From Mytilus californianus (taxonomy: Eukaryota), in contig NW_026262667.1 in the NCBI RefSeq assembly GCF_021869535.1, positions 1,178,001-1,242,000 on the forward strand: a stretch of DNA of 64,000 nt, given 5' to 3'. The notes under the pieces were generated by a model that saw only the letters and a list, made by a program, of their open reading frames with translations, was not told the origin of the DNA and searched no databases. A program made the translations under genes and the position numbers. Within the stretch, counting starts at the first letter, position 1. Each line of letters opens with the position of its first letter. Shown one piece after another: positions 1 through 32,540 of this stretch.

Positions 1-293
1 ACTGCCTTTATATCAGTACAAACTTTTGGTCGTTTTGAACATCTATAGTTGTCTTCGTCTTCTCGCTGTCTCTTGACAGATTTCCTCAAGTTAGGTGTAC
101 ATGTAATATGATCATCCATACCGAGACCAGAATCATCGTCATCACCAGGAAACAGATTTCGTTTGATGTTTGGAGTCATCACAGACATAAGGTCATTAGC
201 CTTTACTGGTGTAGAATCAAAACTCAGGGTAGAAACAGATGCTGGAATGACATTAAATTCATCATATGTGTCAAATAATCGTTTTGAAAGCAT
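1..293 (-). CDS. cdc25: Cdc25 phosphatase, diverged paralog (copy A), N-terminal 98 codons only; truncated by window edge
   Basis: Manual translation from ATG at 293: MLSKRLFDTYDEFNVIPASVSTLSFDSTPVKANDLMSVMTPNIKRNLFPGDDDDSGLGMDDHITCTPNLRKSVKRQREDEDNYRCSKRPKVCTDIKAV. Colinear with the 9421-10296 ORF, with no indels or stops, 22 nt and 15 aa differences. Not in the ORF track because it runs off the edge. Confidence 0.9.
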   Translation of the reverse strand, partial: MLSKRLFDTYDEFNVIPASVSTLSFDSTPVKANDLMSVMTPNIKRNLFPGDDDDSGLGMDDHITCTPNLRKSVKRQREDEDNYRCSKRPKVCTDIKA

Positions 294-1344
294 TTTTGTT
301 GGTGGTCTGAATTTAAACTGTCATGTATAACGAATTAAATGTTAAATGTTTATGTTTGAAATATTACAAATTTTTATATTTATTTTTGATTTGACAATAA
401 GTAAATCCGGTCTCTAATTGGGAACCCGTGCTCATCTCGTTACTCAAGCAGTGTTCAACTCGGGGTCAACGTTGTAAAGCTTTTGTTAATTGTTTAATTA
501 ATCTCCAATCAATGTCTATGATTGAATTTGTTAGATCAAAAACATTTTCAAATAATTACTCTGGGATTTAAGGCTACAAAGATGATTACAATCAATGACA
601 CAAAGTAATAAAGGCACAGAAGTAAGATAAGTGTTCACATAACAATTTTAATTCTAACGATACAAATTAAATCAATGGGGAAAAAGATAAACAAAAGGTA
701 AATGATGCAAAATTTATATAAATAAATACGAAAACAAAAAACGAGGTTGTATTCAAATGTATCACTATGTAAGGTATAAGTATAAAAATAAAATTGATAA
801 AATTCAATTAAATATTTGATTTTAGTCTCCTCTCTCAATTATATATAATACTACAATACATTAAATGTATAGTATAGATATTAAACAGAGAATCATTCTA
901 TACAGATAATAAGAAACTACAACATTAAACAAATAACAACAAATTCGTCTATTATAAAACATGAGTATATGTACATAATATACGTTACAGAATAAAAAAA
1001 TTTACGCCTATTTAATGTAAGATAACAGACTTTGGCACAGCAATGAATTATATTAATATTTGTGAATAAAAACACTTAATTTTGTTAAAGTCATCAAAAG
1101 ACTTAAAGGATCTTAAAATCGTATTATAATAGACACGTTAACATTACATGGGCTTCATCTTCTAAAATATTTTTACAATTATCACAGACTCAAAATCGTA
1201 AATTTTTCAAATCTCCATGACCGATTCTTTTTTTTTTTTTAACGACATTATATATTTATTCACCAAATATGCTTGTTACATTGTTACTACAATAAACCAA
1301 GCTTTTCTTGATGTATCCTGTAATATTCCACTGATTACCAGGTT

Positions 1345-1623
1345 AGTAGTCAGCTACTGATATATATGCAGTAGTTGTCGTTTGTTGATGTGGTTCATAA
1401 GTGTTTCTCGTTTCTCGTTTTTTATATAGATTAGACCGTTGGTTTTCCCGTTTCAATGGTTTTACACTAGTAATTTTTGGGGCCCTTTATAGCTTACTGT
1501 TCGGTGTGAGCCAAGGCTCCGTGTTGAAGACCGTACTTTGACATATAATGGTTTACTTTTATAAATTTTGACTTGGATGGAGAGTTGTCTCATTGGCACT
1601 CATACCACATCTTCTTATATCTA
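1345..1623. mobile_element. Short dispersed non-autonomous repeat (SINE- or HINE-like); array copies at ~11352-11630, ~21365-21643, ~31140-31414
   Basis: Terminus GAGAGTTGTCTCATTGGCACTCATACCACATCTTCTT. Related degenerate copies occur at ~2539-2640, ~43352-43440, ~48485-48678, ~57781-57852 and ~58586-58606, so it is a dispersed family. Class not determined. Confidence 0.65.
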
Positions 1624-2087
1624 TGTATGTACACATTTCTTGAAATACAATTGTACAACTTTTTTATGCATTATGTTTTTATCTATTCAATCTTCTATAC
1701 TTCTTTTTAGTGACTTCAGTAATTGATTAAATTTTATTGTTGTGGTTTCGTTATATCTTTTTATGTATTCTTGAACAAAAACTTGATATACATTTGTCAA
1801 TTTCTGATTAGATACATAATATGATTTTTATAGAAAAACCTAAAATTGTTAGGAAATAGTTCAGACCAAAATAATTTGATCGATTCTTAGTGGTGCTACT
1901 CCATTTGAAATTTTTAATAGAAAATAGATTAAAATAAAACGAGATTGGGTAAAGTTCCTAAACATTTGTATCAATTCATTTTTAAATCGTTTTAGTGTAA
2001 TAAACCTATATGTCTTTTTGTAAAATAATATATTATAGGGTATGATTTTTTAAATATTCAATACATGTGAAAAGGGTGGGGTACTGG

Positions 2088-2222
2088 ATGTCTCAGCTGC
2101 AGACCCCAGCCACAGAAGGATTGAACTGGCCCCGGGGCTTGGTGACCGATGAAGAGCTGGTTGACATGCTGATGGACACAATTCTGCACTGCTATTTTGA
2201 AGAGTTTTTTCTTTACTCGTGA
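2088..2222 (+). other. Candidate 44-aa small ORF in a GC-richer island (copies 12095-12229, 22108-22242, 31890-32024)
   Basis: MSQLQTPATEGLNWPRGLVTDEELVDMLMDTILHCYFEEFFLYS followed by TGA TGA TAG. The frame stays open in the diverged copy. No family recognised. Confidence 0.25.
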
Positions 2223-2998
2223 TGATAGTATTGCAAAACAAGTACTATTTTTAAAAAACTCCGACGCCTTCAGAAGGGGATATTTTGTTAAAACTTATTT
2301 TTTTAAGTCTTTTTTTATTATATGACAAGACAAGTGTCTGGAAAATTATTCTGGTCATTGCACAAGTGTCTCCCTGTACTGGTTTTAAGAGGTTGCTTAA
2401 GAAATCTTCCATAAAGTACAGCCACCGGAACTTCTATAAGAGAAATGGACGGCATAGTTTCATCTCGAGAGTTTCATGTCAGCATGTTTTAGTACTCCGC
2501 TTGCTTTCCGATAGTGTGGTCATTCATTATAAAAAATAAGGAGATGTGATAAGATTGCCAACGAAACTATCCACCAGAGTTGAAATGACGAAGATATAAG
2601 CAATTACTGGTCACAGTACGGCCTTCAACAATGATCTTTATGAACCTGCGAGTGAAACAAATACAAGGGAAATTGACTCTACCTATTTTCTGACTGAGGG
2701 CCGTAGTTGTGTCAAGATAACGAACTTCAAATATAATTGTAATTGATAAAAGAATCTCATAAAAAAATGCATGTTGATGCTTTTGTCCTTCAGAAAATTG
2801 AGTGTTGATGACATATTTTTTTTCATAATTTCTGTTAATTTTATTATACTTATTTCGAGGAAATTTGTGTGCTGATTCGCATATAGACAAGTTAAGATTA
2901 AAAGAGAGACATGTATAATCGAAAAGAACGGAAAATCTTAGACACAAAGAAAACGTTTTTAGTATCTCTGACCAGTCGTGTGCTATTAATCACAAGGA

Positions 2999-3357
2999 CT
3001 AGCGACACAAAATGGTATGAACGTTGTCCATTGTAGTAAGTCTTTTATTGCAGCGACACAAACTGGTATGTACGTTGTCCATTGTAGTAAGTCTTTTGTT
3101 ACAGCGACACAAAGTGGTATGTACGTTGTCCATTGTAGTAAGTCTTTTATTACAGCGACACAAAGTGGTATGTACGTTGTCCATTGTAGTAAGTCTTTTA
3201 TTACAGCGAAACAAAGTGATATGTACGTTGTCCTTGTAGTAAATCTTTTATTACAGCGACAGAAAGTGGTATGTACGTTGTCCATTGTAGTAAGTCTTTT
3301 ATTACAGCGACACAAAGTGGTATGTACGTTGTCCATTGTAGTAAGTCTTTTATTACT
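2999..3357. repeat. 51-bp minisatellite, 7 copies (also 13006-13364, 23019-23377)
   Basis: Unit ACAGCGACACAAAGTGGTATGTACGTTGTCCATTGTAGTAAGTCTTTTATT; it accounts for the 17-aa periodic pseudo-ORFs. Confidence 0.95.
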
Positions 3358-3615
3358 ACCACGTGACAGAATACGAACTAAATCTATTTATTTTGAGCAA
3401 GAAATTAAATCTTACATCTTGTACAGAAAAAAATGTTTACACACACTGATATTAACAAATATTAAAATTATTAAATCAGTTAAACAATTTTTTTTGCACT
3501 AAAACCGAGCACATTTGCGCACTGTTGTTATCACAGCGAGCGCGAGAAGAATGACTTAATTAAGCGACGAAAAGCAAAATATATAGTATAGAAGAAACTG
3601 TAAGTTATTATGTGA

Positions 3616-3790
3616 GGGGGTGGACAGGGGTAAGGCAACATGGGAATGAGGGGCGGGATATGGGGGAAGAGGTGGAGAAAAAATAAGGATATTCTGGGAA
3701 ATATTTCTTTGCCGATTTTCGTCTGTGAGTGATTGGAGGCAAGTGGGAGTTGAGGGTAGGGAAGTAGAAATCAGGGACCCCCCCTTTTCC
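3616..3790 (+). other. G-rich purine tract with G-quadruplex-forming potential (copies +10007, +20020, and ~33345-33510)
   Basis: GGGGG-TGGACA-GGGG-TAAGGCAACAT-GGG-AATGA-GGGG-C-GGG-ATAT-GGGGG in an otherwise very AT-rich region. Confidence 0.55.
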
Positions 3791-4431
3791 ACCCCTCTTA
3801 TGTCGACAAACGATTGTCTGTAATTATTGGTAAAAATAGGACATTATGATAATTGCAGTGACTGCATTTCTAATTAACATGTAGAAATCGTTTACAGTTT
3901 TTAGAAATGCAGTTGTCTCCCTTTCCTCGCAAAATTCGACGAACCGGTTTATTTCAGTTAGTATATTATGTGTACTAACATAAAATGTCCAGCACTAGGG
4001 TTTAAGACTAAAAAGAAGAACACGTCGTCGTAAAGATTTGATGGTAAGAAAGAGTTTCTGATGTTTGTAAGTCTTTTTTTTTATGTGTTTATTGCATCGG
4101 CGATGACGTGGCTAACATTAAGGCAGCGAGTCAACTGCCTCACCAATTTAGATAAAAATAGAAAAGTATATGAATAGATAGATGTATTCCTATGCCTCAA
4201 GCTTTGGTTCTAAACATTTGACTTTTCTGCTCTTCAATATTAAATTTAAGCGTAATTAGTCCATCATTTTTTGTATCATAAAAATGAAAAAGGTAGGTAC
4301 AAATAACTTTTTTTAGGAACGGCCAAATGATAGTTTGTCAGAGGAGAGGAGTCAGAACTAGACGTGAATCTGACATTTTTAACCGGCAGTTTCAATCAAA
4401 TGTAATGACTTAATGAGCATTGGAAATAAGT

Positions 4432-4836
4432 ATTATTACATTGGTAGCATTGAATTACATTGATTTCCCAGTCAAATAAAAACCGATAATTTCACATGTG
4501 AAATAAACGTGGTTATTTCACTCTCTGACGTCATACAACAATAGGCGTTGTCAAGACGTCGAAAACGTCGGATCAAAACAAATTGTGAATGCGTAGAAAA
4601 AAGATATAGTTCCTTACATTTTCTACATTAATTTCATTAAAAAAAAGCCATTTGCCAATGTAATAAAAAGAATAACTAATCAAAGAATTCAAATATCGAA
4701 AAATATTCAACTCGTGACCGAACAACACTGATAATTAACTCATGCGCTACGCGCATTCGTGAATTAATGTGTTGTTCGTCACTCGTTGAATATTTTTCTC
4801 TATTTGAATTCTTCGATTAGTTATTCTATAATTATT
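4432..4836. mobile_element. 399-bp segment containing a ~159-bp hairpin (4669-4827); probable non-autonomous DNA element part
   Basis: Arms AATAACTAATCAAAGAATTCAAATATCGAAAAATATTCAACTCGTGACCGAACAACAC and its near-perfect reverse complement. Bounded by ATTATT at 4432 and 4831; absent at the matching position (~34148) of the diverged copy. Confidence 0.6.
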
Positions 4837-5599
4837 TCATCCGATGATAAAATTATGCCAAAAATCAGAATTTTTCATAGACAAGAACCTTGTGCCATGG
4901 TGTAGCCAATCAAGTCTCTTCTTCCACGCCCACCCCCAAAAAAAGAAAGGAAAAAAGAGGGAGAAACTAGACAATACTTAAATCTTAAAAATAAAAATCA
5001 TGATTCCAATTATAAATACAATGTAGCTGAAATTTAGTTAAAGATACTAATTTGATTTGAAACATTTTCTTTGTCAGTTAATTATTGTATACGACTGCAT
5101 ATTCAGTTTTTCTTAATTATAGGATATCTAGCTAGTTTATTTCTTTATTCTGCATAAGAATGATCCTAAGGTTGTACTGGTGTACAGAAATATTTACCAT
5201 AGATTTCTTCCGGGTGGCAGTATGGTCAATGTCAGGGGAGGGGACGTTTGTTTGGCGTTTCTCGATGTATCGGTACGTATATTATTATACTCAGACACTT
5301 TCCAACATACCCCCTTTTTCCAGTGGCAGTCTGAATTCAGTATCCACCCTTTTCGATCGACCCATTTTGCAGAAACTTTTTAATGGGTATAATGTTGATT
5401 TGTTCTCATTCTAAACCACAAGGATTGACTGACTTATAAAAATGTGGTCATCCATGGACTTCTCCCTTCCTGTACTAAAACCCATGCTTAAAAGGGGGTC
5501 CGTCTGTCTGTGTGGGTTGTATAAATACACAGCCACGTTCGGTCGGAACTAGAACATGTTAAATCCAAGGCCTCATGTACTTGAAAAAAAATCAGATTT

Positions 5600-5884
5600 T
5601 ATGCATAAGGGGCATTTTAAATCCAAAATAGGCATAAACGTATCCTCTGTTAAACTTACTAACATTTTCATAGAGGTTGGGCGATCTTTAAAAATACAGC
5701 TAAATCTAGCCAAAAAAAAAAAAACTGTGACACAAAAAAATGTTGACTCTAACTTGCACTCAATGAGAAAGAATCTTATAAATTATGGAATAATTTACTC
5801 TTCTAATCCGAAAGATCCTCTGGTAAAAAAAAATTATTGCAAATTATATAGAGAATATAACAAATGCAGAAAAAATAAAAAAAT
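5600..5884 (+). pseudogene. Degraded LINE ORF2 fragment (linker between endonuclease and RT); copies +10007, +20020 and ~34830-35083
   Basis: DSNLHSMRKNLINYGIIYSSNPKDPLVKKNYCKLYREYNKCRK. In the diverged copy it continues after the Helentron-type insert as LFKEDILEQLEILHEDIPNRYWKLFNKL. Confidence 0.7.
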
Positions 5885-6467
5885 AAAGTGCTGTGTCATA
5901 AGCGCATGATACGCCCGTCGCATTTCAAAGAATAACGTTCCTCTGGTATCTTTCGTCCCTCTTCCATAACTCCTCAATGTCATATCAGAAATTTCTAAAA
6001 AAAAAACTAAAAGGAGGTTATTTTAATAAATATAAACCAGTCACCAAAGTTTCATAAAAACTGCCTAAAGCACTTTTGAGTTATTGTCCGAAAACTGGAA
6101 ATCACCCCTTTTTAATGAATAAAACCCCATAACTCGGAAACGTAAAATTTAAAATTTATAAAAATCGAAAGGGAGCTCACGTCAATAGACATTAACAATT
6201 CACCAAAGGTGCATGCAAATTAGTTAAAGCGTTTTTGAGTTATTATCCGAAAACTGGAAAATCCCCCTTTTTTAATGAAAAAAACCCATAACTCGGAAAT
6301 GTAAAATCTAAAATTTATAAAAATCGAAAGGGAGCTCACGTCAATAGATATAAACAATTCAACAAAGTTTAATGCAAATTGGTTGAAGCGTTTTTGAGTT
6401 ATTGTCCGACATGTTGACGACGAACGGACGGACGGACAACGAAATACCATAATACGTCCCGTAAAAA
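5885..6467 (+). mobile_element. Helentron-type non-autonomous element (HINE) with central ~155-bp tandem repeats; 3' hairpin deleted (copies +10007, +20020)
   Basis: 5' subterminal ATACGCCCG (5909-5917), about 2.5 central repeats and a (GACG)n microsatellite near the 3' end. Lacks the 16 bp ACTTTTTCGGGCGTAT present in the 35084-35816 copy. Confidence 0.75.
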
Positions 6468-7800
6468 CTTTCCATTTCTAAGTAGCAACATTTTAGCAGC
6501 GCCTACATACGGAGTATATATCTCCCAATTGATACGATATACCAGGGCTTGTGTTTCCTATCAAGATTTCCTTGATAGAGGGTTACTGCTCACAAGAGTT
6601 CCAATGGTTCCAAGTTGAAATCATCCTTTCATGGTTTATGGCGAACTTGGTGTCTATCCCATGGCAGTCTACATTAAACTGCGTATGGTAAATTATTGGT
6701 GTAGAATTGTCCACGGCAAAGAAAATAAGTTGTCACACATTTTGTATAACTTTATGTTTTTTAAATATTCACAGAATAACTGTACGTCTGAATGGGTTAT
6801 TTTTATAAAAAATATTCTTGAAACATGTGGCTATAGTAATATCTGGTTAGCACAAACTGGCTTTAACACAAAATGGCTAAATAATAGTTTAAAACAGAAG
6901 TTATTTGACCAATTTCAACAAAACTGGCGTTCAGATATATGTAATTCGTCAAAAGGTTTATCGTACAGATTATATAAGGATAAGTTTGAATTCGAAAAAT
7001 ATTTAGATATATTACCAGATAGAGATAGGGTTATATTTTGTAGATTTAGAACTGGTAATCATAGATTACCAATTGAAACTGGTAGATGGATAGGTTTAGA
7101 TAGAGAAAGGAGATATTGTAATTTATGTCAATGTCAAGAATTAGGTGACGAATTTCACTTTCTTCTGAATTGTAGATCCCTAGACGACTCAAGAAAACTG
7201 TTTTTGGATAATTGTTATTGTAACAGAGTAAATGTAATTAAATTTTGTAAATTATTACAAACAACACATAGAAATAAGTTAAAAAATATATGTAAATTTA
7301 TAAAGGTTATAAATTCATTAGCAGGTCTTCCTGGTTAGCCTTTGTCTATCTGTTTTTCTATTATAATAACTAAATGATCTTGTATAGTAATTGTAACATT
7401 CATATCTTGTCATGTGCACAATTTATTTTGTATACTATGTATTATTATTTCATTCTTTGTACCAATGTGTATACAATGGTTTTAAAGAATAAAATTGTCT
7501 TGTCTTGTCTTTCGTAAATTTTACGGACGCCTTCACGAGTTGGTTGATCGTTATCGAATATCTGTTTCACAGACGACGACGGACGTGTTCAAATTGTCGT
7601 AACCACAATCCCGTACTCTTTTCCCCGAATGTGACCTACCGAATTAGACTTGTCACTGGGTTTGCACTAAAATGAACAACACGACGGATGCCACATGTGG
7701 AGCAGGATCTGATTACCCTTCCAGGGCATCTGAGATCACCCCGGTTTTTTGTGGGGTTCGTGTTGCTCAGTCTTCAGTTTTCTATGTTGTGTTTAGTGTA
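6468..7800 (+). mobile_element. 3' part of a Penelope-like retroelement split by a LINE insertion (pieces 6468-6630 and 7514-7800; copies +10007, +20020)
   Basis: 6468 onward matches NFPFLSSNI-AAP-YGVYISQLIRY of the 46311-48140 element, and 7514-7800 matches its 3' end (CCACATGTGGAGCAGGATCTG...GGGGTTCGTGTTGCTC). Confidence 0.8.
6631..7509 (+). mobile_element. 5'-truncated non-LTR retrotransposon (ORF2 C-terminus with CCHC zinc knuckle, RTE-X/Proto2-like), ORF 6631-7338
   Basis: FRTGNHRLPIETGRW...RYCNLCQCQELGDEFHFLLNC motif, AATAAA followed by a (TTGTC)3 tail, and CTTTC duplicated at both junctions (6626-6630, 7509-7513). Clade assignment tentative. Confidence 0.85.
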
Positions 7801-9286
7801 CATTGATTGATTAAAAAATAGTGCTTTTTAAAATGTGTTTTCCATGCGAAAAGCTGAGAACCGTTCTGCAATTCATTTCAAATTTTTAAATATGTTTTTT
7901 CTTATATCAAAATGGGGGTGATGCTTGATATTGATACTTGAACTTATAAAATGTGAACAAAATTAAGTTTCAAATATCAGCACATTATTCCTAAAGAGTA
8001 TTGATATTGAGCCAAACAATTTTAGTTTAATGAAAACAAAATTGCAAAATCCCCTTACCGGAACTTTGCTCAATTACCTATAAATGTCTACCGAAATTTA
8101 CAGTATCACAGTTTTATGTACGTCCATTTAGGTTTAAATAAAATGTTACATTATCTCGATTTTTGACGTGTAAATATATTTATAAATACTCACAGATGGC
8201 TTAAAACTCGATTTTAGTAAGTATCCCCCCCCCCCCAAAAAAAAGAAAAAATATAAAAGATTTATAAAACGAAAGCAAAATTTCATATGAGACCATCAGA
8301 GGAGAAAAACTTTGTAAATTGGCTAATCAGTATAAATTATTGCCTCTGGAGGCATCCGATCTGAACATAAGTAGATCATCATGTGTAGAGGATATCCAAT
8401 ACATTATTCTGAGAGGTTTATTCGAGGTGGCCAAGAAGTGGCAGAGAAGATGACAAAAAAAATAATTTCCATGTGATTTCAATGAGAAGTAGGTGCAATC
8501 AATGAACGCCATATGGATAAAAAGACGTGCACGCCAATGAAACACCAACCAAACGACAAAAAAAATCAAATTGCATACAGTCTTAAAAAAAGACAGTTAT
8601 CTACCCAAAATGTCTAGTTTGATAACGTCCATAGTCTATATAAGTTGTGAATTGATTGGACAGAAAAAATCCAATAACTACCGTCGACACCGAATTCTCA
8701 AACATTAAAGGAGGCGTTTGTCGAGAGTCTTTCAATCGCCTAAGGTTTTTAAACATTTCTGCTTCAGCGCAGTTTCAAGGAAGAAGATTGTTTTGAATTG
8801 ACCAAATAGAACCTTCAAAGGTTTTTCATCAGCACTATGTGCCATTAATTCCGCTATGACTGGTAGCCAATCAACATTAAATAAAATGAGGATCTGTGTA
8901 GAGGAGCAACCAATCATAAACATTCAGCTTCAAAACACGTCGTCTTGTTATTTCAGAGCAGAAGATTTTTTTAAATTGATCATTCAGAACTTAAGATTGT
9001 CTCTATATTCATATTTTTCTCCGATCGGAACGAACAGGGGAATTATTAAAGATTTAGATCTTCAATACATTATTCCTGTCAAGTTTAGTTCAAATTTGAA
9101 AGAGATAACGAATTCTGAGTGATAATTGTGAATAGCCCAGAGTGCATTAATAGCTTTTTTTTATGTCATATTTACTGTTTTCAATTTGACATAGGCTTGT
9201 TTAAAATAACTTGAGGTCTTTCTCAGTATCAGCAGTAAAAAAAATATACATCATGACAAAACAAAAACATTTAGATATTGGTAATC

Positions 9287-9349
9287 TTTAATATATGAAT
9301 ACCGTTTTATAACTGATAACAATAACAATAAAATACAGTTTGTATAAAA
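9287..9349 (-). promoter_or_regulatory. Putative cdc25 3'UTR signals: two UUUUAU CPE-like motifs (9328-9333, 9344-9349) and an AUUAAA hexamer (9287-9292)
   Basis: Motif matches 70-135 nt downstream of the stop codon. The AT-rich background makes chance matches likely. Confidence 0.3.
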
Positions 9350-9420
9350 CAAAGCACCGAAATCACTTCTATCATAGATAACTATTAGCACTAGTAAATT
9401 TCTAAATTAATAAGACAGTT

Positions 9421-10296
9421 CTAAAATCTCATTGATTTTTTGGCATATCTTCGTTTTTCACCAGCTGTCCATGACTTTGACTTGACTCGAAAACGTCGCA
9501 AATCTTCTGAGTGGTCGGAATGAAACATTGGTCGATAGCTCACTGGGTCACATAGATCTGGCTGTTCATTGAAGAATGCCTTGTAGCCACCATCTAGTAA
9601 ATAAATTTCTGGAAAGTTCAGTGATGGATAATTTTCTTTATTGAGTTCCCTGTCTTTGCTTCTGAGAAATCGTAACATTTTAGGACCTCTTTCAGACGAA
9701 AACTCACAGTGGAAGATCACAACTTCTTTATCTTTAGTCGGTTGACGAAGCAAAGTTAAAATGGTTTCATGCAAATACATATTCTCCGCTCCTCTAATAT
9801 GTCCACCTTCAAATTCATACGGGTATCGGCAGTCGATGATCCTGTAGTCACTGATTACGTCATCATAGTCTCCATTAACAACACCAGCAAGTGTCTGTGA
9901 AGTGATGCTTTTCAAATCAGAATGCTTTCCAGTGACAGTTGGTAAAGTATGTAATCTACTACCATCGGCTATGAAGTCGTCGTTCTCTTCAAGTTTGGTT
10001 ACCACTGCCTTTATATCGGTACAAACTTTTGGATGTTTTGAACATCTTGAGCTGTCATCTTCTAAACGCTGTCTCTTGGCAGATTTCTTCAAGCTATGTG
10101 TACATGAAATATGATCATCCATACCGAGACCAGAATCATCGTCATCACCAGGAAACAGATTTCGTTTGATGTTTGGAGTCATCACAGACATAAGGTCATT
10201 AGCCTTTACTGGTGTAGAATCAAAACTCCGGGTAGATATAGATGCTGGAATGACATTAATTTCATCATATGTGTCAAATAGTCGTCTTGAAAGCAT
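9421..10296 (-). CDS. cdc25: Cdc25 dual-specificity (M-phase inducer) phosphatase, 291 aa, single ORF without introns (copy B1)
   Basis: Rhodanese-fold Cdc25 motifs IIDCRYPYEFEGGHIRGA, HCEFSSERGP (CX5R), YPSLNFPEIYLLDGGYKAFF and C-terminal FRVKSKSW. In-frame TGA 9 codons upstream of the ATG; A-rich start context CAACAAAAATG. Confidence 0.97.
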   Translation of the reverse strand: MLSRRLFDTYDEINVIPASISTRSFDSTPVKANDLMSVMTPNIKRNLFPGDDDDSGLGMDDHISCTHSLKKSAKRQRLEDDSSRCSKHPKVCTDIKAVVTKLEENDDFIADGSRLHTLPTVTGKHSDLKSITSQTLAGVVNGDYDDVISDYRIIDCRYPYEFEGGHIRGAENMYLHETILTLLRQPTKDKEVVIFHCEFSSERGPKMLRFLRSKDRELNKENYPSLNFPEIYLLDGGYKAFFNEQPDLCDPVSYRPMFHSDHSEDLRRFRVKSKSWTAGEKRRYAKKSMRF

Positions 10297-16200: not shown

Positions 16201-16637
16201 AACAATTCACCAAAGGTGCATGCAAATTAGTTAAAGCGTTTTTGAGTTATTATCCGAAAACTGGAAAATCCCCCTTTTTTAATGAAAAAAACCCATAACT
16301 CGGAAATGTAAAATCTAAAATTTATAAAAATCGAAAGGGAGCTCACGTCAATAGATATAAACAATTCAACAAAGTTTAATGCAAATTGGTTGAAGCGTTT
16401 TTGAGTTATTGTCCGACATGTTGACGACGAACGGACGGACGGACAACGAAATACCATAATACGTCCCGTAAAAACTTTCCATTTCTAAGTAGCAACATTT
16501 TAGCAGCGCCTACATACGGAGTATATATCTCCCAATTGATACGATATACCAGGGCTTGTGTTTCCTATCAAGATTTCCTTGATAGAGGGTTACTGCTCAC
16601 AAGAGTTCCAATGGTTCCAAGTTGAAATCATCCTTTC

Positions 16638-23300: not shown

Positions 23301-26300
23301 TCCATTGTAGTAAGTCTTTTATTACAGCGACACAGAGTGGTATGTACGTTGTCCATTGTAGTAAGTCTTTTATTACTACCACGTGACAGAATACGAACTA
23401 AATCTATTTATTTTGAGCAAGAAATTAAATCTTACATCTTGTACAGAAAAAAATGTTTACACACACTGATATTAACAAATATTAAAATTATTAAATCAGT
23501 TAAACAATTTTTTTTGCACTAAAACCGAGCACATTTGCGCACTGTTGTTATCACAGCGAGCGCGAGAAGAATGACTTAATTAAGCGACGAAAAGCAAAAT
23601 ATATAGTATAGAAGAAACTGTAAGTTATTATGTGAGGGGGTGGACAGGGGTAAGGCAACATGGGAATGAGGGGCGGGATATGGGGGAAGAGGTGGAGAAA
23701 AAATAAGGATATTCTGGGAAATATTTCTTTGCCGATTTTCGTCTGTGAGTGATTGGAGGCAAGTGGGAGTTGAGGGTAGGGAAGTAGAAATCAGGGACCC
23801 CCCCTTTTCCACCCCTCTTATGTCGACAAACGATTGTCTGTAATTATTGGTAAAAATAGGACATTATGATAATTGCAGTGACTGCATTTCTAATTAACAT
23901 GTAGAAATCGTTTACAGTTTTTAGAAATGCAGTTGTCTCCCTTTCCTCGCAAAATTCGACGAACCGGTTTATTTCAGTTAGTATATTATGTGTACTAACA
24001 TAAAATGTCCAGCACTAGGGTTTAAGACTAAAAAGAAGAACACGTCGTCGTAAAGATTTGATGGTAAGAAAGAGTTTCTGATGTTTGTAAGTCTTTTTTT
24101 TTATGTGTTTATTGCATCGGCGATGACGTGGCTAACATTAAGGCAGCGAGTCAACTGCCTCACCAATTTAGATAAAAATAGAAAAGTATATGAATAGATA
24201 GATGTATTCCTATGCCTCAAGCTTTGGTTCTAAACATTTGACTTTTCTGCTCTTCAATATTAAATTTAAGCGTAATTAGTCCATCATTTTTTGTATCATA
24301 AAAATGAAAAAGGTAGGTACAAATAACTTTTTTTAGGAACGGCCAAATGATAGTTTGTCAGAGGAGAGGAGTCAGAACTAGACGTGAATCTGACATTTTT
24401 AACCGGCAGTTTCAATCAAATGTAATGACTTAATGAGCATTGGAAATAAGTATTATTACATTGGTAGCATTGAATTACATTGATTTCCCAGTCAAATAAA
24501 AACCGATAATTTCACATGTGAAATAAACGTGGTTATTTCACTCTCTGACGTCATACAACAATAGGCGTTGTCAAGACGTCGAAAACGTCGGATCAAAACA
24601 AATTGTGAATGCGTAGAAAAAAGATATAGTTCCTTACATTTTCTACATTAATTTCATTAAAAAAAAGCCATTTGCCAATGTAATAAAAAGAATAACTAAT
24701 CAAAGAATTCAAATATCGAAAAATATTCAACTCGTGACCGAACAACACTGATAATTAACTCATGCGCTACGCGCATTCGTGAATTAATGTGTTGTTCGTC
24801 ACTCGTTGAATATTTTTCTCTATTTGAATTCTTCGATTAGTTATTCTATAATTATTTCATCCGATGATAAAATTATGCCAAAAATCAGAATTTTTCATAG
24901 ACAAGAACCTTGTGCCATGGTGTAGCCAATCAAGTCTCTTCTTCCACGCCCACCCCCAAAAAAAGAAAGGAAAAAAGAGGGAGAAACTAGACAATACTTA
25001 AATCTTAAAAATAAAAATCATGATTCCAATTATAAATACAATGTAGCTGAAATTTAGTTAAAGATACTAATTTGATTTGAAACATTTTCTTTGTCAGTTA
25101 ATTATTGTATACGACTGCATATTCAGTTTTTCTTAATTATAGGATATCTAGCTAGTTTATTTCTTTATTCTGCATAAGAATGATCCTAAGGTTGTACTGG
25201 TGTACAGAAATATTTACCATAGATTTCTTCCGGGTGGCAGTATGGTCAATGTCAGGGGAGGGGACGTTTGTTTGGCGTTTCTCGATGTATCGGTACGTAT
25301 ATTATTATACTCAGACACTTTCCAACATACCCCCTTTTTCCAGTGGCAGTCTGAATTCAGTATCCACCCTTTTCGATCGACCCATTTTGCAGAAACTTTT
25401 TAATGGGTATAATGTTGATTTGTTCTCATTCTAAACCACAAGGATTGACTGACTTATAAAAATGTGGTCATCCATGGACTTCTCCCTTCCTGTACTAAAA
25501 CCCATGCTTAAAAGGGGGTCCGTCTGTCTGTGTGGGTTGTATAAATACACAGCCACGTTCGGTCGGAACTAGAACATGTTAAATCCAAGGCCTCATGTAC
25601 TTGAAAAAAAATCAGATTTTATGCATAAGGGGCATTTTAAATCCAAAATAGGCATAAACGTATCCTCTGTTAAACTTACTAACATTTTCATAGAGGTTGG
25701 GCGATCTTTAAAAATACAGCTAAATCTAGCCAAAAAAAAAAAAACTGTGACACAAAAAAATGTTGACTCTAACTTGCACTCAATGAGAAAGAATCTTATA
25801 AATTATGGAATAATTTACTCTTCTAATCCGAAAGATCCTCTGGTAAAAAAAAATTATTGCAAATTATATAGAGAATATAACAAATGCAGAAAAAATAAAA
25901 AAATAAAGTGCTGTGTCATAAGCGCATGATACGCCCGTCGCATTTCAAAGAATAACGTTCCTCTGGTATCTTTCGTCCCTCTTCCATAACTCCTCAATGT
26001 CATATCAGAAATTTCTAAAAAAAAAACTAAAAGGAGGTTATTTTAATAAATATAAACCAGTCACCAAAGTTTCATAAAAACTGCCTAAAGCACTTTTGAG
26101 TTATTGTCCGAAAACTGGAAATCACCCCTTTTTAATGAATAAAACCCCATAACTCGGAAACGTAAAATTTAAAATTTATAAAAATCGAAAGGGAGCTCAC
26201 GTCAATAGACATTAACAATTCACCAAAGGTGCATGCAAATTAGTTAAAGCGTTTTTGAGTTATTATCCGAAAACTGGAAAATCCCCCTTTTTTAATGAAA

Positions 26301-26650
26301 AAAACCCATAACTCGGAAATGTAAAATCTAAAATTTATAAAAATCGAAAGGGAGCTCACGTCAATAGATATAAACAATTCAACAAAGTTTAATGCAAATT
26401 GGTTGAAGCGTTTTTGAGTTATTGTCCGACATGTTGACGACGAACGGACGGACGGACAACGAAATACCATAATACGTCCCGTAAAAACTTTCCATTTCTA
26501 AGTAGCAACATTTTAGCAGCGCCTACATACGGAGTATATATCTCCCAATTGATACGATATACCAGGGCTTGTGTTTCCTATCAAGATTTCCTTGATAGAG
26601 GGTTACTGCTCACAAGAGTTCCAATGGTTCCAAGTTGAAATCATCCTTTC

Positions 26651-27529
26651 ATGGTTTATGGCGAACTTGGTGTCTATCCCATGGCAGTCTACATTAAACT
26701 GCGTATGGTAAATTATTGGTGTAGAATTGTCCACGGCAAAGAAAATAAGTTGTCACACATTTTGTATAACTTTATGTTTTTTAAATATTCACAGAATAAC
26801 TGTACGTCTGAATGGGTTATTTTTATAAAAAATATTCTTGAAACATGTGGCTATAGTAATATCTGGTTAGCACAAACTGGCTTTAACACAAAATGGCTAA
26901 ATAATAGTTTAAAACAGAAGTTATTTGACCAATTTCAACAAAACTGGCGTTCAGATATATGTAATTCGTCAAAAGGTTTATCGTACAGATTATATAAGGA
27001 TAAGTTTGAATTCGAAAAATATTTAGATATATTACCAGATAGAGATAGGGTTATATTTTGTAGATTTAGAACTGGTAATCATAGATTACCAATTGAAACT
27101 GGTAGATGGATAGGTTTAGATAGAGAAAGGAGATATTGTAATTTATGTCAATGTCAAGAATTAGGTGACGAATTTCACTTTCTTCTGAATTGTAGATCCC
27201 TAGACGACTCAAGAAAACTGTTTTTGGATAATTGTTATTGTAACAGAGTAAATGTAATTAAATTTTGTAAATTATTACAAACAACACATAGAAATAAGTT
27301 AAAAAATATATGTAAATTTATAAAGGTTATAAATTCATTAGCAGGTCTTCCTGGTTAGCCTTTGTCTATCTGTTTTTCTATTATAATAACTAAATGATCT
27401 TGTATAGTAATTGTAACATTCATATCTTGTCATGTGCACAATTTATTTTGTATACTATGTATTATTATTTCATTCTTTGTACCAATGTGTATACAATGGT
27501 TTTAAAGAATAAAATTGTCTTGTCTTGTC
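26651..27529 (+). mobile_element. Same LINE 3' fragment, unit 3 (ORF 26651-27358)
   Basis: Identical ORF translation in the track. Confidence 0.85.
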
Positions 27530-28243
27530 TTTCGTAAATTTTACGGACGCCTTCACGAGTTGGTTGATCGTTATCGAATATCTGTTTCACAGACGACGAC
27601 GGACGTGTTCAAATTGTCGTAACCACAATCCCGTACTCTTTTCCCCGAATGTGACCTACCGAATTAGACTTGTCACTGGGTTTGCACTAAAATGAACAAC
27701 ACGACGGATGCCACATGTGGAGCAGGATCTGATTACCCTTCCAGGGCATCTGAGATCACCCCGGTTTTTTGTGGGGTTCGTGTTGCTCAGTCTTCAGTTT
27801 TCTATGTTGTGTTTAGTGTACATTGATTGATTAAAAAATAGTGCTTTTTAAAATGTGTTTTCCATGCGAAAAGCTGAGAACCGTTCTGCAATTCATTTCA
27901 AATTTTTAAATATGTTTTTTCTTATATCAAAATGGGGGTGATGCTTGATATTGATACTTGAACTTATAAAATGTGAACAAAATTAAGTTTCAAATATCAG
28001 CACATTATTCCTAAAGAGTATTGATATTGAGCCAAACAATTTTAGTTTAATGAAAACAAAATTGCAAAATCCCCTTACCGGAACTTTGCTCAATTACCTA
28101 TAAATGTCTACCGAAATTTACAGTATCACAGTTTTATGTACGTCCATTTAGGTTTAAATAAAATGTTACATTATCTCGATTTTTGACGTGTAAATATATT
28201 TATAAATACTCACAGATGGCTTAAAACTCGATTTTAGTAAGTA

Positions 28244-28275
<32 letters not shown>

Positions 28276-29452
28276 AGAAAAAATATAAAAGATTTATAAA
28301 ACGAAAGCAAAATTTCATATGAGACCATCAGAGGAGAAAAACTTTGTAAATTGGCTAATCAGTATAAATTATTGCCTCTGGAGGCATCCGATCTGAACAT
28401 AAGTAGATCATCATGTGTAGAGGATATCCAATACATTATTCTGAGAGGTTTATTCGAGGTGGCCAAGAAGTGGCAGAGAAGATGACAAAAAAAATAATTT
28501 CCATGTGATTTCAATGAGAAGTAGGTGCAATCAATGAACGCCATATGGATAAAAAGACGTGCACGCCAATGAAACACCAACCAAACGACAAAAAAAATCA
28601 AATTGCATACAGTCTTAAAAAAAGACAGTTATCTACCCAAAATGTCTAGTTTGATAACGTCCATAGTCTATATAAGTTGTGAATTGATTGGACAGAAAAA
28701 ATCCAATAACTACCGTCGACACCGAATTCTCAAACATTAAAGGAGGCGTTTGTCGAGAGTCTTTCAATCGCCTAAGGTTTTTAAACTTTTCTGCTTCAGC
28801 GCAGTTTCAAGGAAGAAGATTGTTTTGAATTGACCAAATAGAACCTTCAAAGGTTTTTCATCAGCACTATGTGCCATTAATTCCGCTATGACTGGTAGCC
28901 AATCAACATTAAATAAAATGAGGATCTGTGTAGAGGAGCAACCAATCATAAACATTCAGCTTCAAAACACGTCGTCTTGTTATTTCAGAGCAGAAGATTT
29001 TTTTAAATTGATCATTCAGAACTTAAGATTGTCTCTATATTCATATTTTTCTCCGATCGGAACGAACAGGGGAATTATTAAAGATTTAGATCTTCAATAC
29101 ATTATTCCTGTCAAGTTTAGTTCAAATTTGAAAGAGATAACGAATTCTGAGTGATAATTGTGAATAGCCCAGAGTGCATTAATAGCTTTTTTTTATGTCA
29201 TATTTACTGTTTTCAATTTGACATAGGCTTGTTTAAAATAACTTGAGGTCTTTCTCAGTATCAGCAGTAAAAAAAATATACATCATGACAAAACAAAAAC
29301 ATTTAGATATTGGTAATCTTTAATATATGAATACCGTTTTATAACTGATAACAATAACAATAAAATACAGTTTGTATAAAACAAAGCACCGAAATCACTT
29401 CTATTATAGATAACTATTAGCACTAGTAAATTTCTAAATTAATAAGACAGTT

Positions 29453-30328
29453 CTAAAATCTCATTGATTTTTTGGCATATCTTCGTTTTTCACCAGCTGT
29501 CCATGACTTTGACTTGACTCGAAAACGTCGCAAATCTTCTGAGTGGTCGGAATGAAACATTGGTCGATAGCTCACTGGGTCACATAGATCTGGCTGTTCA
29601 TTGAAGAATGCCTTGTAGCCACCATCTAGTAAATAAATTTCTGGAAAGTTCAGTGATGGATAATTTTCTTTATTGAGTTCCCTGTCTTTGCTTCTGAGAA
29701 ATCGTAACATTTTAGGACCTCTTTCAGACGAAAACTCACAGTGGAAGATCACAACTTCTTTATCTTTAGTCGGTTGACGAAGCAAAGTTAAAATGGTTTC
29801 ATGCAAATACATATTCTCCGCTCCTCTAATATGTCCACCTTCAAATTCATACGGGTATCGGCAGTCGATGATCCTGTAGTCACTGATTACGTCATCATAG
29901 TCTCCATTAACAACACCAGCAAGTGTCTGTGAAGTGATGCTTTTCAAATCAGAATGCTTTCCAGTGACAGTTGGTAAAGTATGTAATCTACTACCATCGG
30001 CTATGAAGTCGTCGTTCTCTTCAAGTTTGGTTACCACTGCCTTTATATCGGTACAAACTTTTGGATGTTTTGAACATCTTGAGCTGTCATCTTCTAAACG
30101 CTGTCTCTTGGCAGATTTCTTCAAGCTATGTGTACATGAAATATGATCATCCATACCGAGACCAGAATCATCGTCATCACCAGGAAACAGATTTCGTTTG
30201 ATGTTTGGAGTCATCACAGACATAAGGTCATTAGCCTTTACTGGTGTAGAATCAAAACTCCGGGTAGATATAGATGCTGGAATGACATTAATTTCATCAT
30301 ATGTGTCAAATAGTCGTCTTGAAAGCAT
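29453..30328 (-). CDS. cdc25: Cdc25 phosphatase copy B3, protein identical to B1
   Basis: ORF-track translation is identical to 9421-10296. Confidence 0.97.
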   Translation of the reverse strand: MLSRRLFDTYDEINVIPASISTRSFDSTPVKANDLMSVMTPNIKRNLFPGDDDDSGLGMDDHISCTHSLKKSAKRQRLEDDSSRCSKHPKVCTDIKAVVTKLEENDDFIADGSRLHTLPTVTGKHSDLKSITSQTLAGVVNGDYDDVISDYRIIDCRYPYEFEGGHIRGAENMYLHETILTLLRQPTKDKEVVIFHCEFSSERGPKMLRFLRSKDRELNKENYPSLNFPEIYLLDGGYKAFFNEQPDLCDPVSYRPMFHSDHSEDLRRFRVKSKSWTAGEKRRYAKKSMRF

Positions 30329-32540
30329 TTTTGTTGGTGGTCTGAATTTAAACTGTCAAGTATAACGAATTAAATGTTAAATGTTTATGTTTGAAATATT
30401 ACAAATTTCTATATTTATATTTTTGATTTGACAATAACTAATTCCGGGCTCTAATAGGAAACCCGTGCTCATCTCGTTACTCAAGCAGTGTTCAACTCGG
30501 GGTCAACGTTGTAAAGCTTTTGTTAATTGTTTAATTAATCGCCAATCAATGTCTATGATTGAATTTGTTAGATCAAAAACATTTTCAAATAATTACTCTG
30601 GGATTTAAGGCTACAAAGATGATTACAATCAATGACACAAAGTAATAAAGGCACAGAAGTAAGATAAGTGTTCACATAACAATTTTAATTCTAACGATAC
30701 AAATTAAATCAATGGGGAAAAAAGATAAACAAAAAGTAAATTCGTCTATTATAAAACATGTCTATATGTACATAATATACGTTACAGAATAAAACATTTT
30801 TACGCCTATTTAATGTAAGATAACAGACTTTGGCACAGCAATGAATTAAATTAATATTTGTGAATAAAAACACTTATTTTTGTTTATCATCAAAAGACGT
30901 AAAGGATCCTAAAATCGTATTATAATAGACACGTTAACATTACATGGGCTTCATCTTCTAAAATATTTTTACAATTATCATAGACTCAAAATCGTAAATT
31001 TTTCAAATCTCCATGATCGATTCTTTTTTTTTATAAACGACATTATATATTTATTCACCAAATATGCTTGTTACATTGTTACTTCAAGAAACCAAGCTTT
31101 TCTTGATGTATCCTGTAATATTCCACCGATTACCCAGGATAATAATCAGCTGCTGGTATATATGCAGTAGCTGTCGTTTGTTGATGTGGTTCATAAGTGT
31201 TTCTCGTTTTTTATATAGATTAGACCGTTGGTTTTCCCGTTTGAATGGTTTTACACTAGTAATTTTTGGGGCCCTTTATATGTATGCTTGCTGTTCGGTG
31301 TGAGCCAAAGCTCCGTGTTGAAGACCGTACTTTGACCATGTTGACCTATAATGGTTTACTTTTATAAATTTTGACTTGGATGGAGAGTTGTCTCATACCA
31401 CATCTTCTTATATCTATGTATGTACACACTTCTTGAAATACAATTGTACAACATTTTTATCCATAATGTTTTTATCTATTCAGTCGGCTATACTTCTTTT
31501 TAGTGACTTCAGTAATGGATTAAATTTTTTTGTTCTGTTTTCGTTATATCTTTTTATGTATTCTTGAACAAAAATTTGATAAACATTTACATTTGTCAAT
31601 TTCTGATTAGATACATAATATGCTTTGTATATAGAAAAACCTAAAATTGATAGGAAATAATTCAGACCAAATTAATTTAATCGATTCTTAGTGGTGCTAC
31701 TCCATTTGAAATTTTTAATAGAAAATAGATTAAAATAAAACGAGATTGGGTAAAGTTCCTAAACATTTGTATCAATTCATTTTTAAATCGTTTATAGTGT
31801 AATATACCTATATGTCTTTTTGTAAAATAATATATTATAGGGTATGATTTTTTAAATATTCAATACATGTGAAAAGGGTGGGGTACTGGATGTCTCAGCT
31901 GCACACCCCAGCCACAGAAGGATCGAACTGGCCCCGGGGCTTGGTGACCGACGAAGAGCTGGTTGACATGCTGATGGACACAATTCTGCACTGCTATTTT
32001 GAAGAGTTTTTTCTTTACTCGTAATGATAGTATTGCAAAACAAGTACTATTTTAAAAAAACTCCGACACCTTCAGATGGAGGCATTTTGTTAAAAGTTAT
32101 TTTTTTTAAGTCTTTTTTGATTATATGACAAGACAATTGTCTGGAAAATTATTCTGGTCATTGCAGAAGTGTCTCCCTATACTGATTTTAAGACGTTGCT
32201 TATTAAATCTTCCATAAAGTACAGCCACCGGAACTACTATAATTCCGATAGTGTGGTCATTCATTATAAAAAATAAGGAGATGATTGATAAAAGAATCTC
32301 ATAAAAAAATGCATGTTGATGCTTTTGTCCTTCAGAAAATTGAGTGTTGATGACATATTTTTTTTCCTAATTTCTGTTAATTTTATTATACTTATTTCAA
32401 GGAACTTTGTGTGCTGATTCGCATATAGACAAGTTACGATTAAAAGAGAGACATGTATAATCGAAAAGAACGTAAAATCTTAGACACAAAGATAAAGTTT
32501 TTAGTATCTCTGACCAGTCGTGTGCGATTAATCACAAGGA

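What the first reader, a model, noticed from the sequence alone, without database searches (positions are those of the whole stretch)
1..30541. Recently amplified tandem array of an intronless, compact cdc25 mitotic-inducer gene
Seen: at least four cdc25 copies spaced ~10 kb apart, three of them in units that differ at only about a dozen substitutions spotted by eye plus homopolymer lengths. Each CDS is a single 876-bp ORF. Established: CDC25 activates CDK1/2 and is rate-limiting and dosage-sensitive for mitotic and meiotic entry (String/Twine, CDC25A-C); typical metazoan orthologs are larger (~420-580 aa) and vertebrate ones are multi-exon. Inference: this is a retro-derived or intron-lost cdc25 under copy-number amplification, possibly serving oocyte maturation, rapid cleavage or spermatogenesis, or acting as a selfish or neoplasia-associated cell-cycle accelerator. 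I cannot tell these apart from sequence alone.
Basis: partly seen in the sequence, partly recalled or inferred. Interest (0 to 1): 0.88.

Follow-up and report, generated by a model that had tools for sequence, protein, structure and literature searches.

The report
Young tandem array of compact Cdc25
A California mussel scaffold carries four ~10-kb tandem repeats, three almost identical, each holding an intact intronless 291-residue Cdc25 cell-cycle phosphatase gene; it is a recent local expansion within an old mussel retrogene family that gene predictions already list, so it is real but fairly ordinary.

Summary
The window lies on Mytilus californianus scaffold JAKFGE010000019.1 (primary assembly GCA_021869535.1).

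- **Array:** exactly four tandem units span about 38.4 kb, from 2.6 kb left of the window to position 35796. Each carries one 876-bp single-ORF cdc25-like gene on the minus strand.
- **Young and old parts:** the three repeats of the young block differ at only 14 substitution columns plus a few homopolymer indels. The leftmost gene (92% protein identity, only codons 1-97 in the window) and the rightmost spacer are 5-7% diverged. Both jumps in divergence fall at the same unit coordinate. That fits an older two-unit duplication expanded by unequal homologous crossing-over.
- **Protein:** a complete Cdc25 catalytic domain with an intact HCEFSSERGP motif and a disordered ~90-residue N-terminus.
- **Constraint:** dN/dS is about 0.2. 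A ~240-bp promoter block and an ATTAAA signal are conserved across species and paralogues.
- **Origin:** the gene belongs to a mytilid clade, intronless at every locus I could check. That clade nests among 7-8-exon short cdc25-like genes and sits apart from a 612-aa canonical cdc25. An old retroposition is the likely origin, not an event tied to this array.
- **Open points:** expression, true copy number and biological role are untested. No evidence supports a selfish or neoplasia reading.

Other first-stage notes flag more intronless cdc25 arrays elsewhere in this genome.

The parts
1..293 (-). cdc25-like copy 0 (P0001), codons 1-97 only; the rest of the 291-aa CDS lies left of the window (L001:10001-10876)
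   Evidence: tblastn; L001 overlap; 92% protein identity to copies 1-3
9421..10296 (-). cdc25-like copy 1, complete single-ORF CDS (291 aa plus stop)
19435..20310 (-). cdc25-like copy 2; differs from copies 1 and 3 by two nonsynonymous changes
29453..30328 (-). cdc25-like copy 3; protein identical to copy 1
10297..10547 (-). Conserved promoter and 5'UTR block of copy 1 (the same block lies at 20311-20561 and 30329-30579). It holds an inverted CCAAT at 10514..10510, an invariant 16-nt block, a second CCAAT position that reads CCTAT at 10426..10422, and TATAAATA at 10387..10380.
   Evidence: Six-sequence alignment across species and paralogues; sequence read; cross-species DNA similarity ends at about 10529-10547
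9240..9420 (-). Conserved 3'UTR of copy 1, with an invariant ATTAAA at 9292..9287 (129 nt after the stop). A degenerate K-box position lies at 9377..9370.
1..6465 (.). Unit I of the array (starts at L001:12911, about 2.6 kb left of the window). It comprises diverged segment a0 with copy 0, then spacer b at 99.9% identity to units II and III. It has no LINE tail.
6466..16472 (.). Unit II (hybrid): LINE tail, segment a with copy 1, spacer b
16473..26485 (.). Unit III (hybrid): LINE tail, segment a with copy 2, spacer b
26486..35796 (.). Unit IV: LINE tail, segment a with copy 3, then the diverged spacer b' (30742-35796; 90-97% identity to b by piece, mostly about 93%, with large indels)
10620..10708 (.). 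Unit coordinate where divergence switches (equivalent to about 620-704, 20635-20721 and 30655-30741). This is the inferred site of unequal crossing-over.
   Evidence: Sliding-window mismatch table; boundary variants
6622..7514 (+). 5'-truncated non-LTR retrotransposon tail: a 235-aa ORF resembling zf-RVT-bearing Atlas clusters, AATAAA and a (TTGTC)n end. Also present at 16629-17521 and 26642-27534. The matching site in unit I lacks it.
3001..3356 (.). 51-bp satellite with 7 copies (also at 13008-13363 and 23021-23376; 11 copies at 32543-33101 in b'). It produces spurious 112-168-aa ORFs.

Best explanation
This is a real, very young tandem expansion at a locus that already carried duplicated intronless cdc25-like genes.

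**Proposed history**
1. An old, probably mRNA-mediated (retroposition) event in the mytilid lineage removed all ancestral introns from a short cdc25-like gene. The resulting 1.2-1.3-kb single-exon gene carries its own compact promoter and has since multiplied across mytilid genomes.
2. In M. californianus, a roughly 9-kb segment next to an LRR/EF-hand gene was duplicated in tandem. The junction shows no long homology.
3. The two units diverged by 5-7%, and the right-hand unit gained a LINE tail.
4. Unequal homologous crossing-over at one point about 400 bp upstream of the cdc25 start codon then made hybrid units. The result is unit I (a0+b), two hybrids (a+b) and unit IV (a+b').

**Inferred function**
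Each copy should encode an active Cdc25 that removes the inhibitory phosphates from CDK1/2. It has a short disordered regulatory N-terminus that keeps a cyclin-docking-type [RK]xLF motif, S/T-P sites and a DSG degron-like motif. The most likely net effect is a change in Cdc25 dosage. The most plausible setting is germline or early-embryo cell cycles, but that is not shown.
For: **Array anatomy**
- Self-alignment and the per-500-bp mismatch table.
- 14 substitutions between the young units.
- Exact array ends, the LINE-free matching site in unit I and the short junction.
- Both divergence switches sit at the same unit coordinate.

**Enzyme**
- Pfam Rhodanese hit.
- E = 2e-55 to the human CDC25A catalytic domain, with HCEFSSERGP intact.
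- In the AlphaFold model, residues 1-90 are disordered and most of the catalytic core (about 131-250) has block pLDDT 81-94. The top 14 PDB matches are CDC25A/B/C.

**Constraint**
- dN/dS is 0.16-0.27 between species and between paralogues, and 0.11-0.20 in the catalytic half.
- The promoter block and ATTAAA are conserved.

**Derived intronlessness**
- The intronless clade has SH-aLRT 98 and nests inside the multi-exon short clade (99). The canonical clade is separate.
- Single-exon loci.
- Multi-exon relatives.
- Catalytic-domain introns near window-protein positions 135, 167, 207 and 246-250 are shared by canonical and short multi-exon Mytilus genes and are absent here.

**Synteny and youth**
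- The same LRR/EF-hand neighbour and an independent 98%-identical two-copy array occur in M. galloprovincialis.
- Unit divergence of 0.06-0.1% compares with 2.73% heterozygosity in this individual.
Against: - No read-level data were available. A 30-kb stretch of 99.9%-identical 10-kb repeats is hard to assemble from reads with a 14-kb N50, so the copy number could be wrong.
- No retroposition scar (poly-A tract or target-site duplication) flanks the gene. Retro-origin rests only on the wholesale absence of shared introns.
- No expression data exist for these copies.
- The amplified version has lost a conserved CCAAT and a conserved 3'UTR 8-mer. This could mean altered or weakened regulation.
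- The protein tree does not place the syntenic M. galloprovincialis copies as the closest relatives. Orthology within the 291-aa group is blurred, possibly by gene conversion.
Confidence: 0.78

Rival explanations
1. Assembly artefact: the assembler inflated the copy number, or stitched haplotypes into extra units, so the true locus has one or two units.
For: The units are 99.9% identical and about 10 kb long. HiFi read N50 is 14 kb, and the individual is 2.73% heterozygous. The 5-7% divergence of the outer segments is within reach of allelic divergence in mussels.
Against: - Spacer-to-gene junctions can only come from reads of a real tandem repeat.
- The three young units carry distinct private variants: 8 private to the middle one and 6 separating the outer two.
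- Two mixed haplotypes should differ by about 2.7%, not 0.1%.
- The array has clean, integral ends and a LINE tail present in three units but absent in the first.
- M. galloprovincialis also has a tandem pair at the same locus.
Confidence: 0.12
2. The copies are transcriptionally dead retro-derived duplicates on their way to becoming pseudogenes.
For: - The amplified version has CCTAT where five relatives have CCAAT, and CTATGATA where they have CTGTGATA.
- The only two coding changes among the young copies are nonsynonymous.
- A broken fragment lies near the paralogue on scaffold 1.
- In clam IAPs, most retroposed copies were reported silent (PMC7831173).
Against: - All four ORFs are intact.
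- dN/dS is about 0.2 over dS 0.2-0.4 among species and paralogues.
- All catalytic residues are kept.
- The promoter and the poly(A) signal are conserved.
- The young copies are too recent for decay to show either way.
Confidence: 0.08
3. The copies arose by repeated retroposition of a cdc25 mRNA into neighbouring sites, not by DNA duplication.
For: The CDS is intronless, and LINE remains lie within each unit.
Against: Homology between units covers the whole 9-10 kb, including satellite, LINE tail and spacer, in the same order and orientation. No poly-A tract or target-site duplication surrounds the 1.3-kb gene block.
Confidence: 0.02
4. A selfish or neoplasia-linked cell-cycle accelerator, amplified somatically or in a transmissible cancer lineage.
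For: No direct evidence. Cdc25 dosage drives mitotic entry in model systems (established knowledge).
Against: The array sits in the germline reference assembly at a locus that is syntenic and also duplicated in another Mytilus species. The family is under ordinary purifying selection.
Confidence: 0.03

Closest known systems
Human CDC25A/B/C catalytic domains (PDB 8roz, 1qb0, 1c25, 3op3); Drosophila String/Twine
   Same: Same rhodanese-type catalytic domain over about 175 residues. The HCX5R loop (HCEFSSERGP) is identical and the C-terminal helix is kept. Sequence match E = 2e-55, fold match TM-score (by target) 0.76-0.87. The N-terminus keeps an [RK]xLF motif and a DSG-type motif like those described for CDC25A (my own knowledge; motifs seen).
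   Different: The N-terminus is only about 105 residues and has no PF06617 domain. The CDS is a single exon, whereas the canonical Mytilus gene has at least 14 coding exons and 612 aa.
Short multi-exon 'M-phase inducer phosphatase-like' genes of bivalves (for example M. edulis P0088, M. coruscus P0035, C. virginica P0111, Pecten P0045)
   Same: Same mollusc-specific clade of 260-410-aa Cdc25-like proteins (SH-aLRT 99). Often clustered on one chromosome.
   Different: Those genes have 7-8 coding exons and a longer linker after the DSG motif. The window gene lacks every intron.
Bivalve family expansions by tandem duplication plus retroposition (IAPs in the hard clam, PMC7831173; C1qDC, PMC6835236)
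   Same: Same mode of growth: an intronless subclade suggests a retroposed founder, followed by local tandem arrays.
   Different: The family here is a core cell-cycle regulator, not an immune or apoptosis family. I found no paper describing it. The nearest is a remark that C. gigas has seven CDC25 genes and that six CDC25 probes rise in spawned clam oocytes (PMC4254928).

Membership tests
Cdc25 dual-specificity phosphatases | Rhodanese-like catalytic domain | tested here: met
   PF00581, E = 1.3e-12. Predicted fold matches CDC25A/B/C with TM-score (by target) 0.76-0.87; these are the top 14 PDB hits.
Cdc25 dual-specificity phosphatases | Active-site loop HCX5R with catalytic Cys and Arg | tested here: met
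   HCEFSSERGP aligns column for column with the CDC25A/B loops. H196, C197 and R203 are invariant in 46 relatives.
Cdc25 dual-specificity phosphatases | Closer to Cdc25 than to other rhodanese-family proteins | tested here: met
   CDC25 chains score E = 1e-17 to 1e-19. The next fold hits (arsenate reductase, Ygr203w, bacterial rhodaneses) score E = 1e-7 or worse. Only CDC25 chains pass the sequence search.
Cdc25 dual-specificity phosphatases | N-terminal M-phase inducer regulatory domain (PF06617) | tested here: not met
   No PF06617 hit, whereas long mollusc, brachiopod and annelid cdc25 proteins carry it. This domain is typical of long animal Cdc25s and is absent from the whole short mollusc clade, so I do not treat it as defining for the enzyme family.
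Cdc25 dual-specificity phosphatases | Dephosphorylates pT14/pY15 of CDK1/2 and promotes M-phase entry | not testable with these tools
   Needs an enzyme assay or oocyte injection.
Retrogene (processed gene copy) | Lacks all introns present in the parental lineage | tested here: met
   Introns near positions 63, 90, 135, 167, 207 and 246-250 in relatives are all absent here. The intronless clade is nested among intron-bearing genes.
Retrogene (processed gene copy) | Poly-A remnant and target-site duplications at the ends of the copy | tested here: not met
   No A-rich tract follows the ATTAAA signal and no flanking direct repeats were seen. Given dS above 1 between subclades, erasure by age is expected, so this is weak evidence against.
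Retrogene (processed gene copy) | Identifiable multi-exon parent at another locus | tested here: inconclusive
   Multi-exon short cdc25-like genes exist in Mytilus (P0035, P0088), but none is resolved as the direct sister.
Tandem array expanded by non-allelic homologous recombination (NAHR) | Head-to-tail units with hybrid inner units and switch points at one shared unit coordinate | tested here: met
   The mismatch profile switches at about 704, 10708 and 30741, which are the same unit coordinate. The inner units combine the gene segment of the right unit with the spacer of the left unit.

The most novel reading that the evidence does not exclude
The mytilid intronless Cdc25 clade could be a fast-turnover set of germline or early-embryo mitotic inducers. 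This array could be a segregating copy-number variant whose amplified allele has lost a conserved NF-Y-type CCAAT box and a conserved miR-2-type seed match. In that case dosage and regulation of a rate-limiting cell-cycle activator would vary between individual mussels.
Probability: 0.12. Interest if true: 0.6.

Novelty: new member of a known kind. Interest (0 to 1): 0.34.

Why it matters
Cdc25 is a dosage-sensitive trigger of mitosis and meiosis. A mussel genome holding at least eight compact single-exon versions raises the question of why broadcast-spawning bivalves keep so many. One locus here expanded well after the average allelic split in the species.

The array is also a clean, fully resolvable example of how such families grow. 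The order of events is a founding duplication without long homology, then a LINE insertion as a time marker, then unequal crossing-over.

The genes are already predicted and named in public annotation, and the growth mode is well known in bivalves. The value is therefore descriptive unless expression or copy-number data show a phenotype.

Tried and rejected
- **Rfam:** a scan of the whole window found nothing, so no hammerhead ribozyme of the kind noted in another cdc25 array of this genome.
- **K-box 8-mer:** 12 matches, but they reduce to three sites per repeated unit plus three others, and none lies in the proximal 3'UTR of copies 1-3. There is no dense array of miR-2 sites here.
- **Other ORFs in the unit:** Pfam gave only sub-threshold hits. 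BLASTP of the 235-aa ORF against a full LINE from another locus was not significant; only the Atlas feature search pointed to zf-RVT tails.
- **352-aa ORF at 55933-56991:** no family was found.
- **Literature:** five full-text searches for a described bivalve cdc25 expansion or cdc25 retrogene found no dedicated study. Two further searches, on bivalve retrogenes and on the phosphatase name across bivalves, added none. A 2026 Mytilus cell-cycle paper does not mention cdc25.
- **Gene conversion into the N-terminal region:** I considered a conversion tract from another paralogue to explain the extra divergence. Derived changes are split 12 to 8 between the two lineages, and the N-terminus is fast-evolving in all paralogues, so no special explanation is needed.
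- **Scaffold 19 as a haplotig of scaffold 1:** the scaffold-1 paralogues are only 82-88% identical and have different neighbours.
Full report
**Source of the window.** The 291-aa protein P0001 lies on GCA_021869535.1, scaffold JAKFGE010000019.1 (12.5 Mb). Its fetched locus L001 matches window 1-10293 at 100% identity. A paralogue named Mytilus californianus sits in the same assembly. The genome paper gives that accession as the primary M. californianus assembly. It was built from 45x PacBio HiFi reads (read N50 14 kb, maximum 50 kb) from an individual with 2.73% heterozygosity (PMC9710001).

**The observation.**
- Three 876-bp ORFs lie on the minus strand at 9421-10296, 19435-20310 and 29453-30328.
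- The first 97 codons of a fourth copy lie at 293..3.
- Window 1-20722 aligns to 10004-30741 at 99.66% identity.
- The three young repeats (704-10707, 10708-20721, 20722-30741) differ at 14 substitution columns and six small indels, mostly in homopolymers.

**Anatomy of the array.** A sliding mismatch count over the four units shows a mosaic.
- Segment 'a' holds the gene and covers unit coordinates 7515-10707. It is practically identical in units II-IV. The unit I version is 1.5-6% diverged by window, most around the 5' half of the CDS.
- Spacer 'b' covers unit coordinates 704-6465; the LINE tail described below (6622-7514) follows it in units II-IV. The spacer is practically identical in units I-III.
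- The unit IV version of the spacer (b', 30742-35796) is 90-97% identical to b by piece, mostly about 93%, and has large indels.
- Both switches in divergence sit at the same unit coordinate, about 400 bp upstream of the start codon.

Extending leftwards with L001 shows where the array begins. Unit coordinate 6466 corresponds to L001:12911. The array ends at unit coordinate about 6462, which is window 35796. That makes four whole units over about 38.4 kb. The founding junction carries only a few A residues between the spacer end and the unit start, with no long homology.

An 893-bp tail of a non-LTR retrotransposon is present in units II-IV. It comprises a 235-aa ORF resembling clusters that carry the zf-RVT domain, an AATAAA signal and a (TTGTC)n end. 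Unit I lacks it; 6 bp (TGTCCC) lie at the matching site.

The simplest history that fits is:
1. A roughly 9-kb tandem duplication.
2. Divergence of the two units to 5-7%.
3. Insertion of the LINE tail into the right-hand unit.
4. Unequal homologous crossing-over at the a|b boundary, producing hybrid units (gene segment from the right unit, spacer from the left), repeated once more.

The order of events and the crossover mechanism are inferences from the mosaic.

**Age.**
- Young units differ by 0.06-0.1%, about thirty times less than the individual's heterozygosity.
- Copy 0 versus copies 1-3 gives dS = 0.088.
- Comparisons with M. coruscus, M. galloprovincialis and the scaffold-1 paralogue of this genome give dS 0.22-0.40.
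- The last expansion is therefore much younger than typical allelic coalescence and is likely to vary in copy number among individuals. This is inferred, not tested.

**The gene product.**
- Pfam finds only a Rhodanese domain.
- The protein aligns over residues 104-283 with the human CDC25A, B and C catalytic domains (E down to 2e-55). The HCEFSSERGP loop is intact.
- H196, C197 and R203 are invariant in 46 relatives.
- An AlphaFold model gives residues 1-90 pLDDT below 50. The catalytic core (about residues 131-250) has block pLDDT 81-94. The first 14 PDB matches are all CDC25A/B/C.
- The short N-terminus keeps an [RK]xLF motif at residues 4-7, an S-T-P-x-K site and a DSGLGMD motif, all shared with relatives. 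Reading these as a cyclin-docking site, a CDK site and a beta-TrCP-type degron rests on my knowledge of CDC25A.

**Evidence of function.**
- dN/dS is 0.16-0.27 between species and between paralogues. It is 0.11-0.20 in the catalytic half and 0.2-0.6 in the N-terminal part.
- DNA similarity with other Mytilus species is confined to about 1.3 kb: roughly 230-250 bp upstream, the CDS, and about 180 bp downstream.
- The upstream block holds an inverted CCAAT box, an invariant 16-nt element, a second CCAAT box and a TATA box about 90 nt before the ATG.
- The downstream block holds an invariant ATTAAA 129 nt after the stop. Conservation fades after it.
- This fits a compact single-exon transcription unit of about 1.1-1.2 kb. 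No RNA data were available.

**Family context.**
- More than 2,000 proteins match the query. Many are short (260-410 aa) 'M-phase inducer phosphatase-like' predictions from bivalves and gastropods, often several per chromosome.
- Canonical long forms also exist in molluscs. They include a 612-aa M. galloprovincialis protein whose gene spans 19 kb and a 582-aa Tegillarca protein carrying PF06617.
- In a 74-protein tree, the long bivalve proteins form one clade (98). The short mollusc proteins form another (99). Within the short clade, a mytilid group of 33 rows (98) contains the window genes.
- Every member of that group whose locus I could inspect is a single ORF. These are the window copies, P0001, P0002, P0004, P0014, P0023 (on an unnamed ENA contig), the P0026 locus and P0033.
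- Genes outside the group have introns: M. edulis P0088 and M. coruscus P0035 have 8 coding exons, C. virginica P0111 has 7, Pecten P0045 about 8, and the canonical gene at least 14.
- Four catalytic-domain introns map to the same places in the canonical and short multi-exon Mytilus genes: window-protein positions about 135, 167, 207 and 246-250.
- Loss of all introns at once in a nested clade is the classic signature of a processed-mRNA origin. No poly-A or target-site scar remains, so this stays an inference.
- Cluster listings show many 291-aa copies per Mytilus species, mostly on one homologous chromosome. At least eight such genes occur in M. californianus.

**Synteny.** Copy 0 is followed by an LRR/EF-hand gene. 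M. galloprovincialis has the same neighbour, with collinear DNA matches, and its own pair of 291-aa genes 7.9 kb apart in units about 98% identical. The locus has therefore duplicated, or been homogenised, independently in two species.

**Literature.**
- I found no paper on a bivalve cdc25 expansion or a cdc25 retrogene.
- A clam oocyte study notes seven CDC25 genes in C. gigas and six CDC25 or CDC25-like probes more abundant in spawned oocytes (PMC4254928). This is the only hint towards a germline role, and it comes from a different species.
- Growth of bivalve families by tandem duplication plus retroposition is documented for IAPs (PMC7831173).
- The window's proteins are already present in NCBI and UniRef.

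**Verdict.** The retro-origin, however, belongs to an old mytilid clade, and the array itself grew by ordinary DNA-level recombination. This is a new, well-resolved member of a known kind of event in an already annotated gene family. The main open risks are copy-number error in the assembly and the lack of expression data.

Noticed in passing
window 10426..10422 (also 20440..20436 and 30458..30454), minus strand: The second promoter CCAAT box is conserved in copy 0, both M. galloprovincialis copies, M. coruscus and the scaffold-1 paralogue. It reads CCTAT in the amplified copies 1-3.
   Followed up: partly
window 9377..9370, minus strand (3'UTR of copy 1): An 8-mer matching the K-box / miR-2 seed (CTGTGATA) is conserved in the 3'UTR of five relatives. 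It reads CTATGATA in copies 1-3, and copy 3 has a second change at 29405. This is one site only, in a generally conserved UTR.
   Followed up: partly
window 6622-7514 versus L001:12750-12755: A LINE tail is present in three units. The matching site in unit I lacks it and holds TGTCCC, which resembles the element's (TTGTC)n end. No clear target-site duplication is visible.
   Followed up: yes
window 46550-47574 and L001:12600-13116: The left end of the array lies inside a repeat that has an 83%-identical copy at 46550-47083. That copy lies next to ORFs with a reverse-transcriptase-like YIDD motif. The element family was not identified.
   Followed up: no
window 32543-33101 versus 3001-3356: The 51-bp satellite has 11 copies in the old spacer b' but 7 in the young units. 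It creates overlapping 112-168-aa ORFs on both strands that are not genes.
   Followed up: partly
window 36017-36533: A 46-bp tandem repeat, 11 copies at 98% identity, lies just right of the array.
   Followed up: no
window 55933-56991, minus strand: A 352-aa ORF, serine/threonine- and glutamine-rich, has no Pfam family and only weak Atlas leads to disordered transcription-factor regions. It may be an exon of a neighbouring gene.
   Followed up: partly
L003:19275-19794: About 9 kb downstream of the scaffold-1 paralogue P0014 lies a partial cdc25-like copy. It covers only residues 116-291 and is split across reading frames, so it is probably a pseudogene.
   Followed up: no
L002:1-11313: The syntenic M. 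galloprovincialis locus has its own two units at about 98% identity, with a 7.9-kb period. They are separated by a long stretch of 130-290-bp repeats and share only the 1.3-kb gene block with the M. californianus units.
   Followed up: partly
window 63706-64000: A 34-bp tandem repeat runs off the right edge of the window.
   Followed up: no
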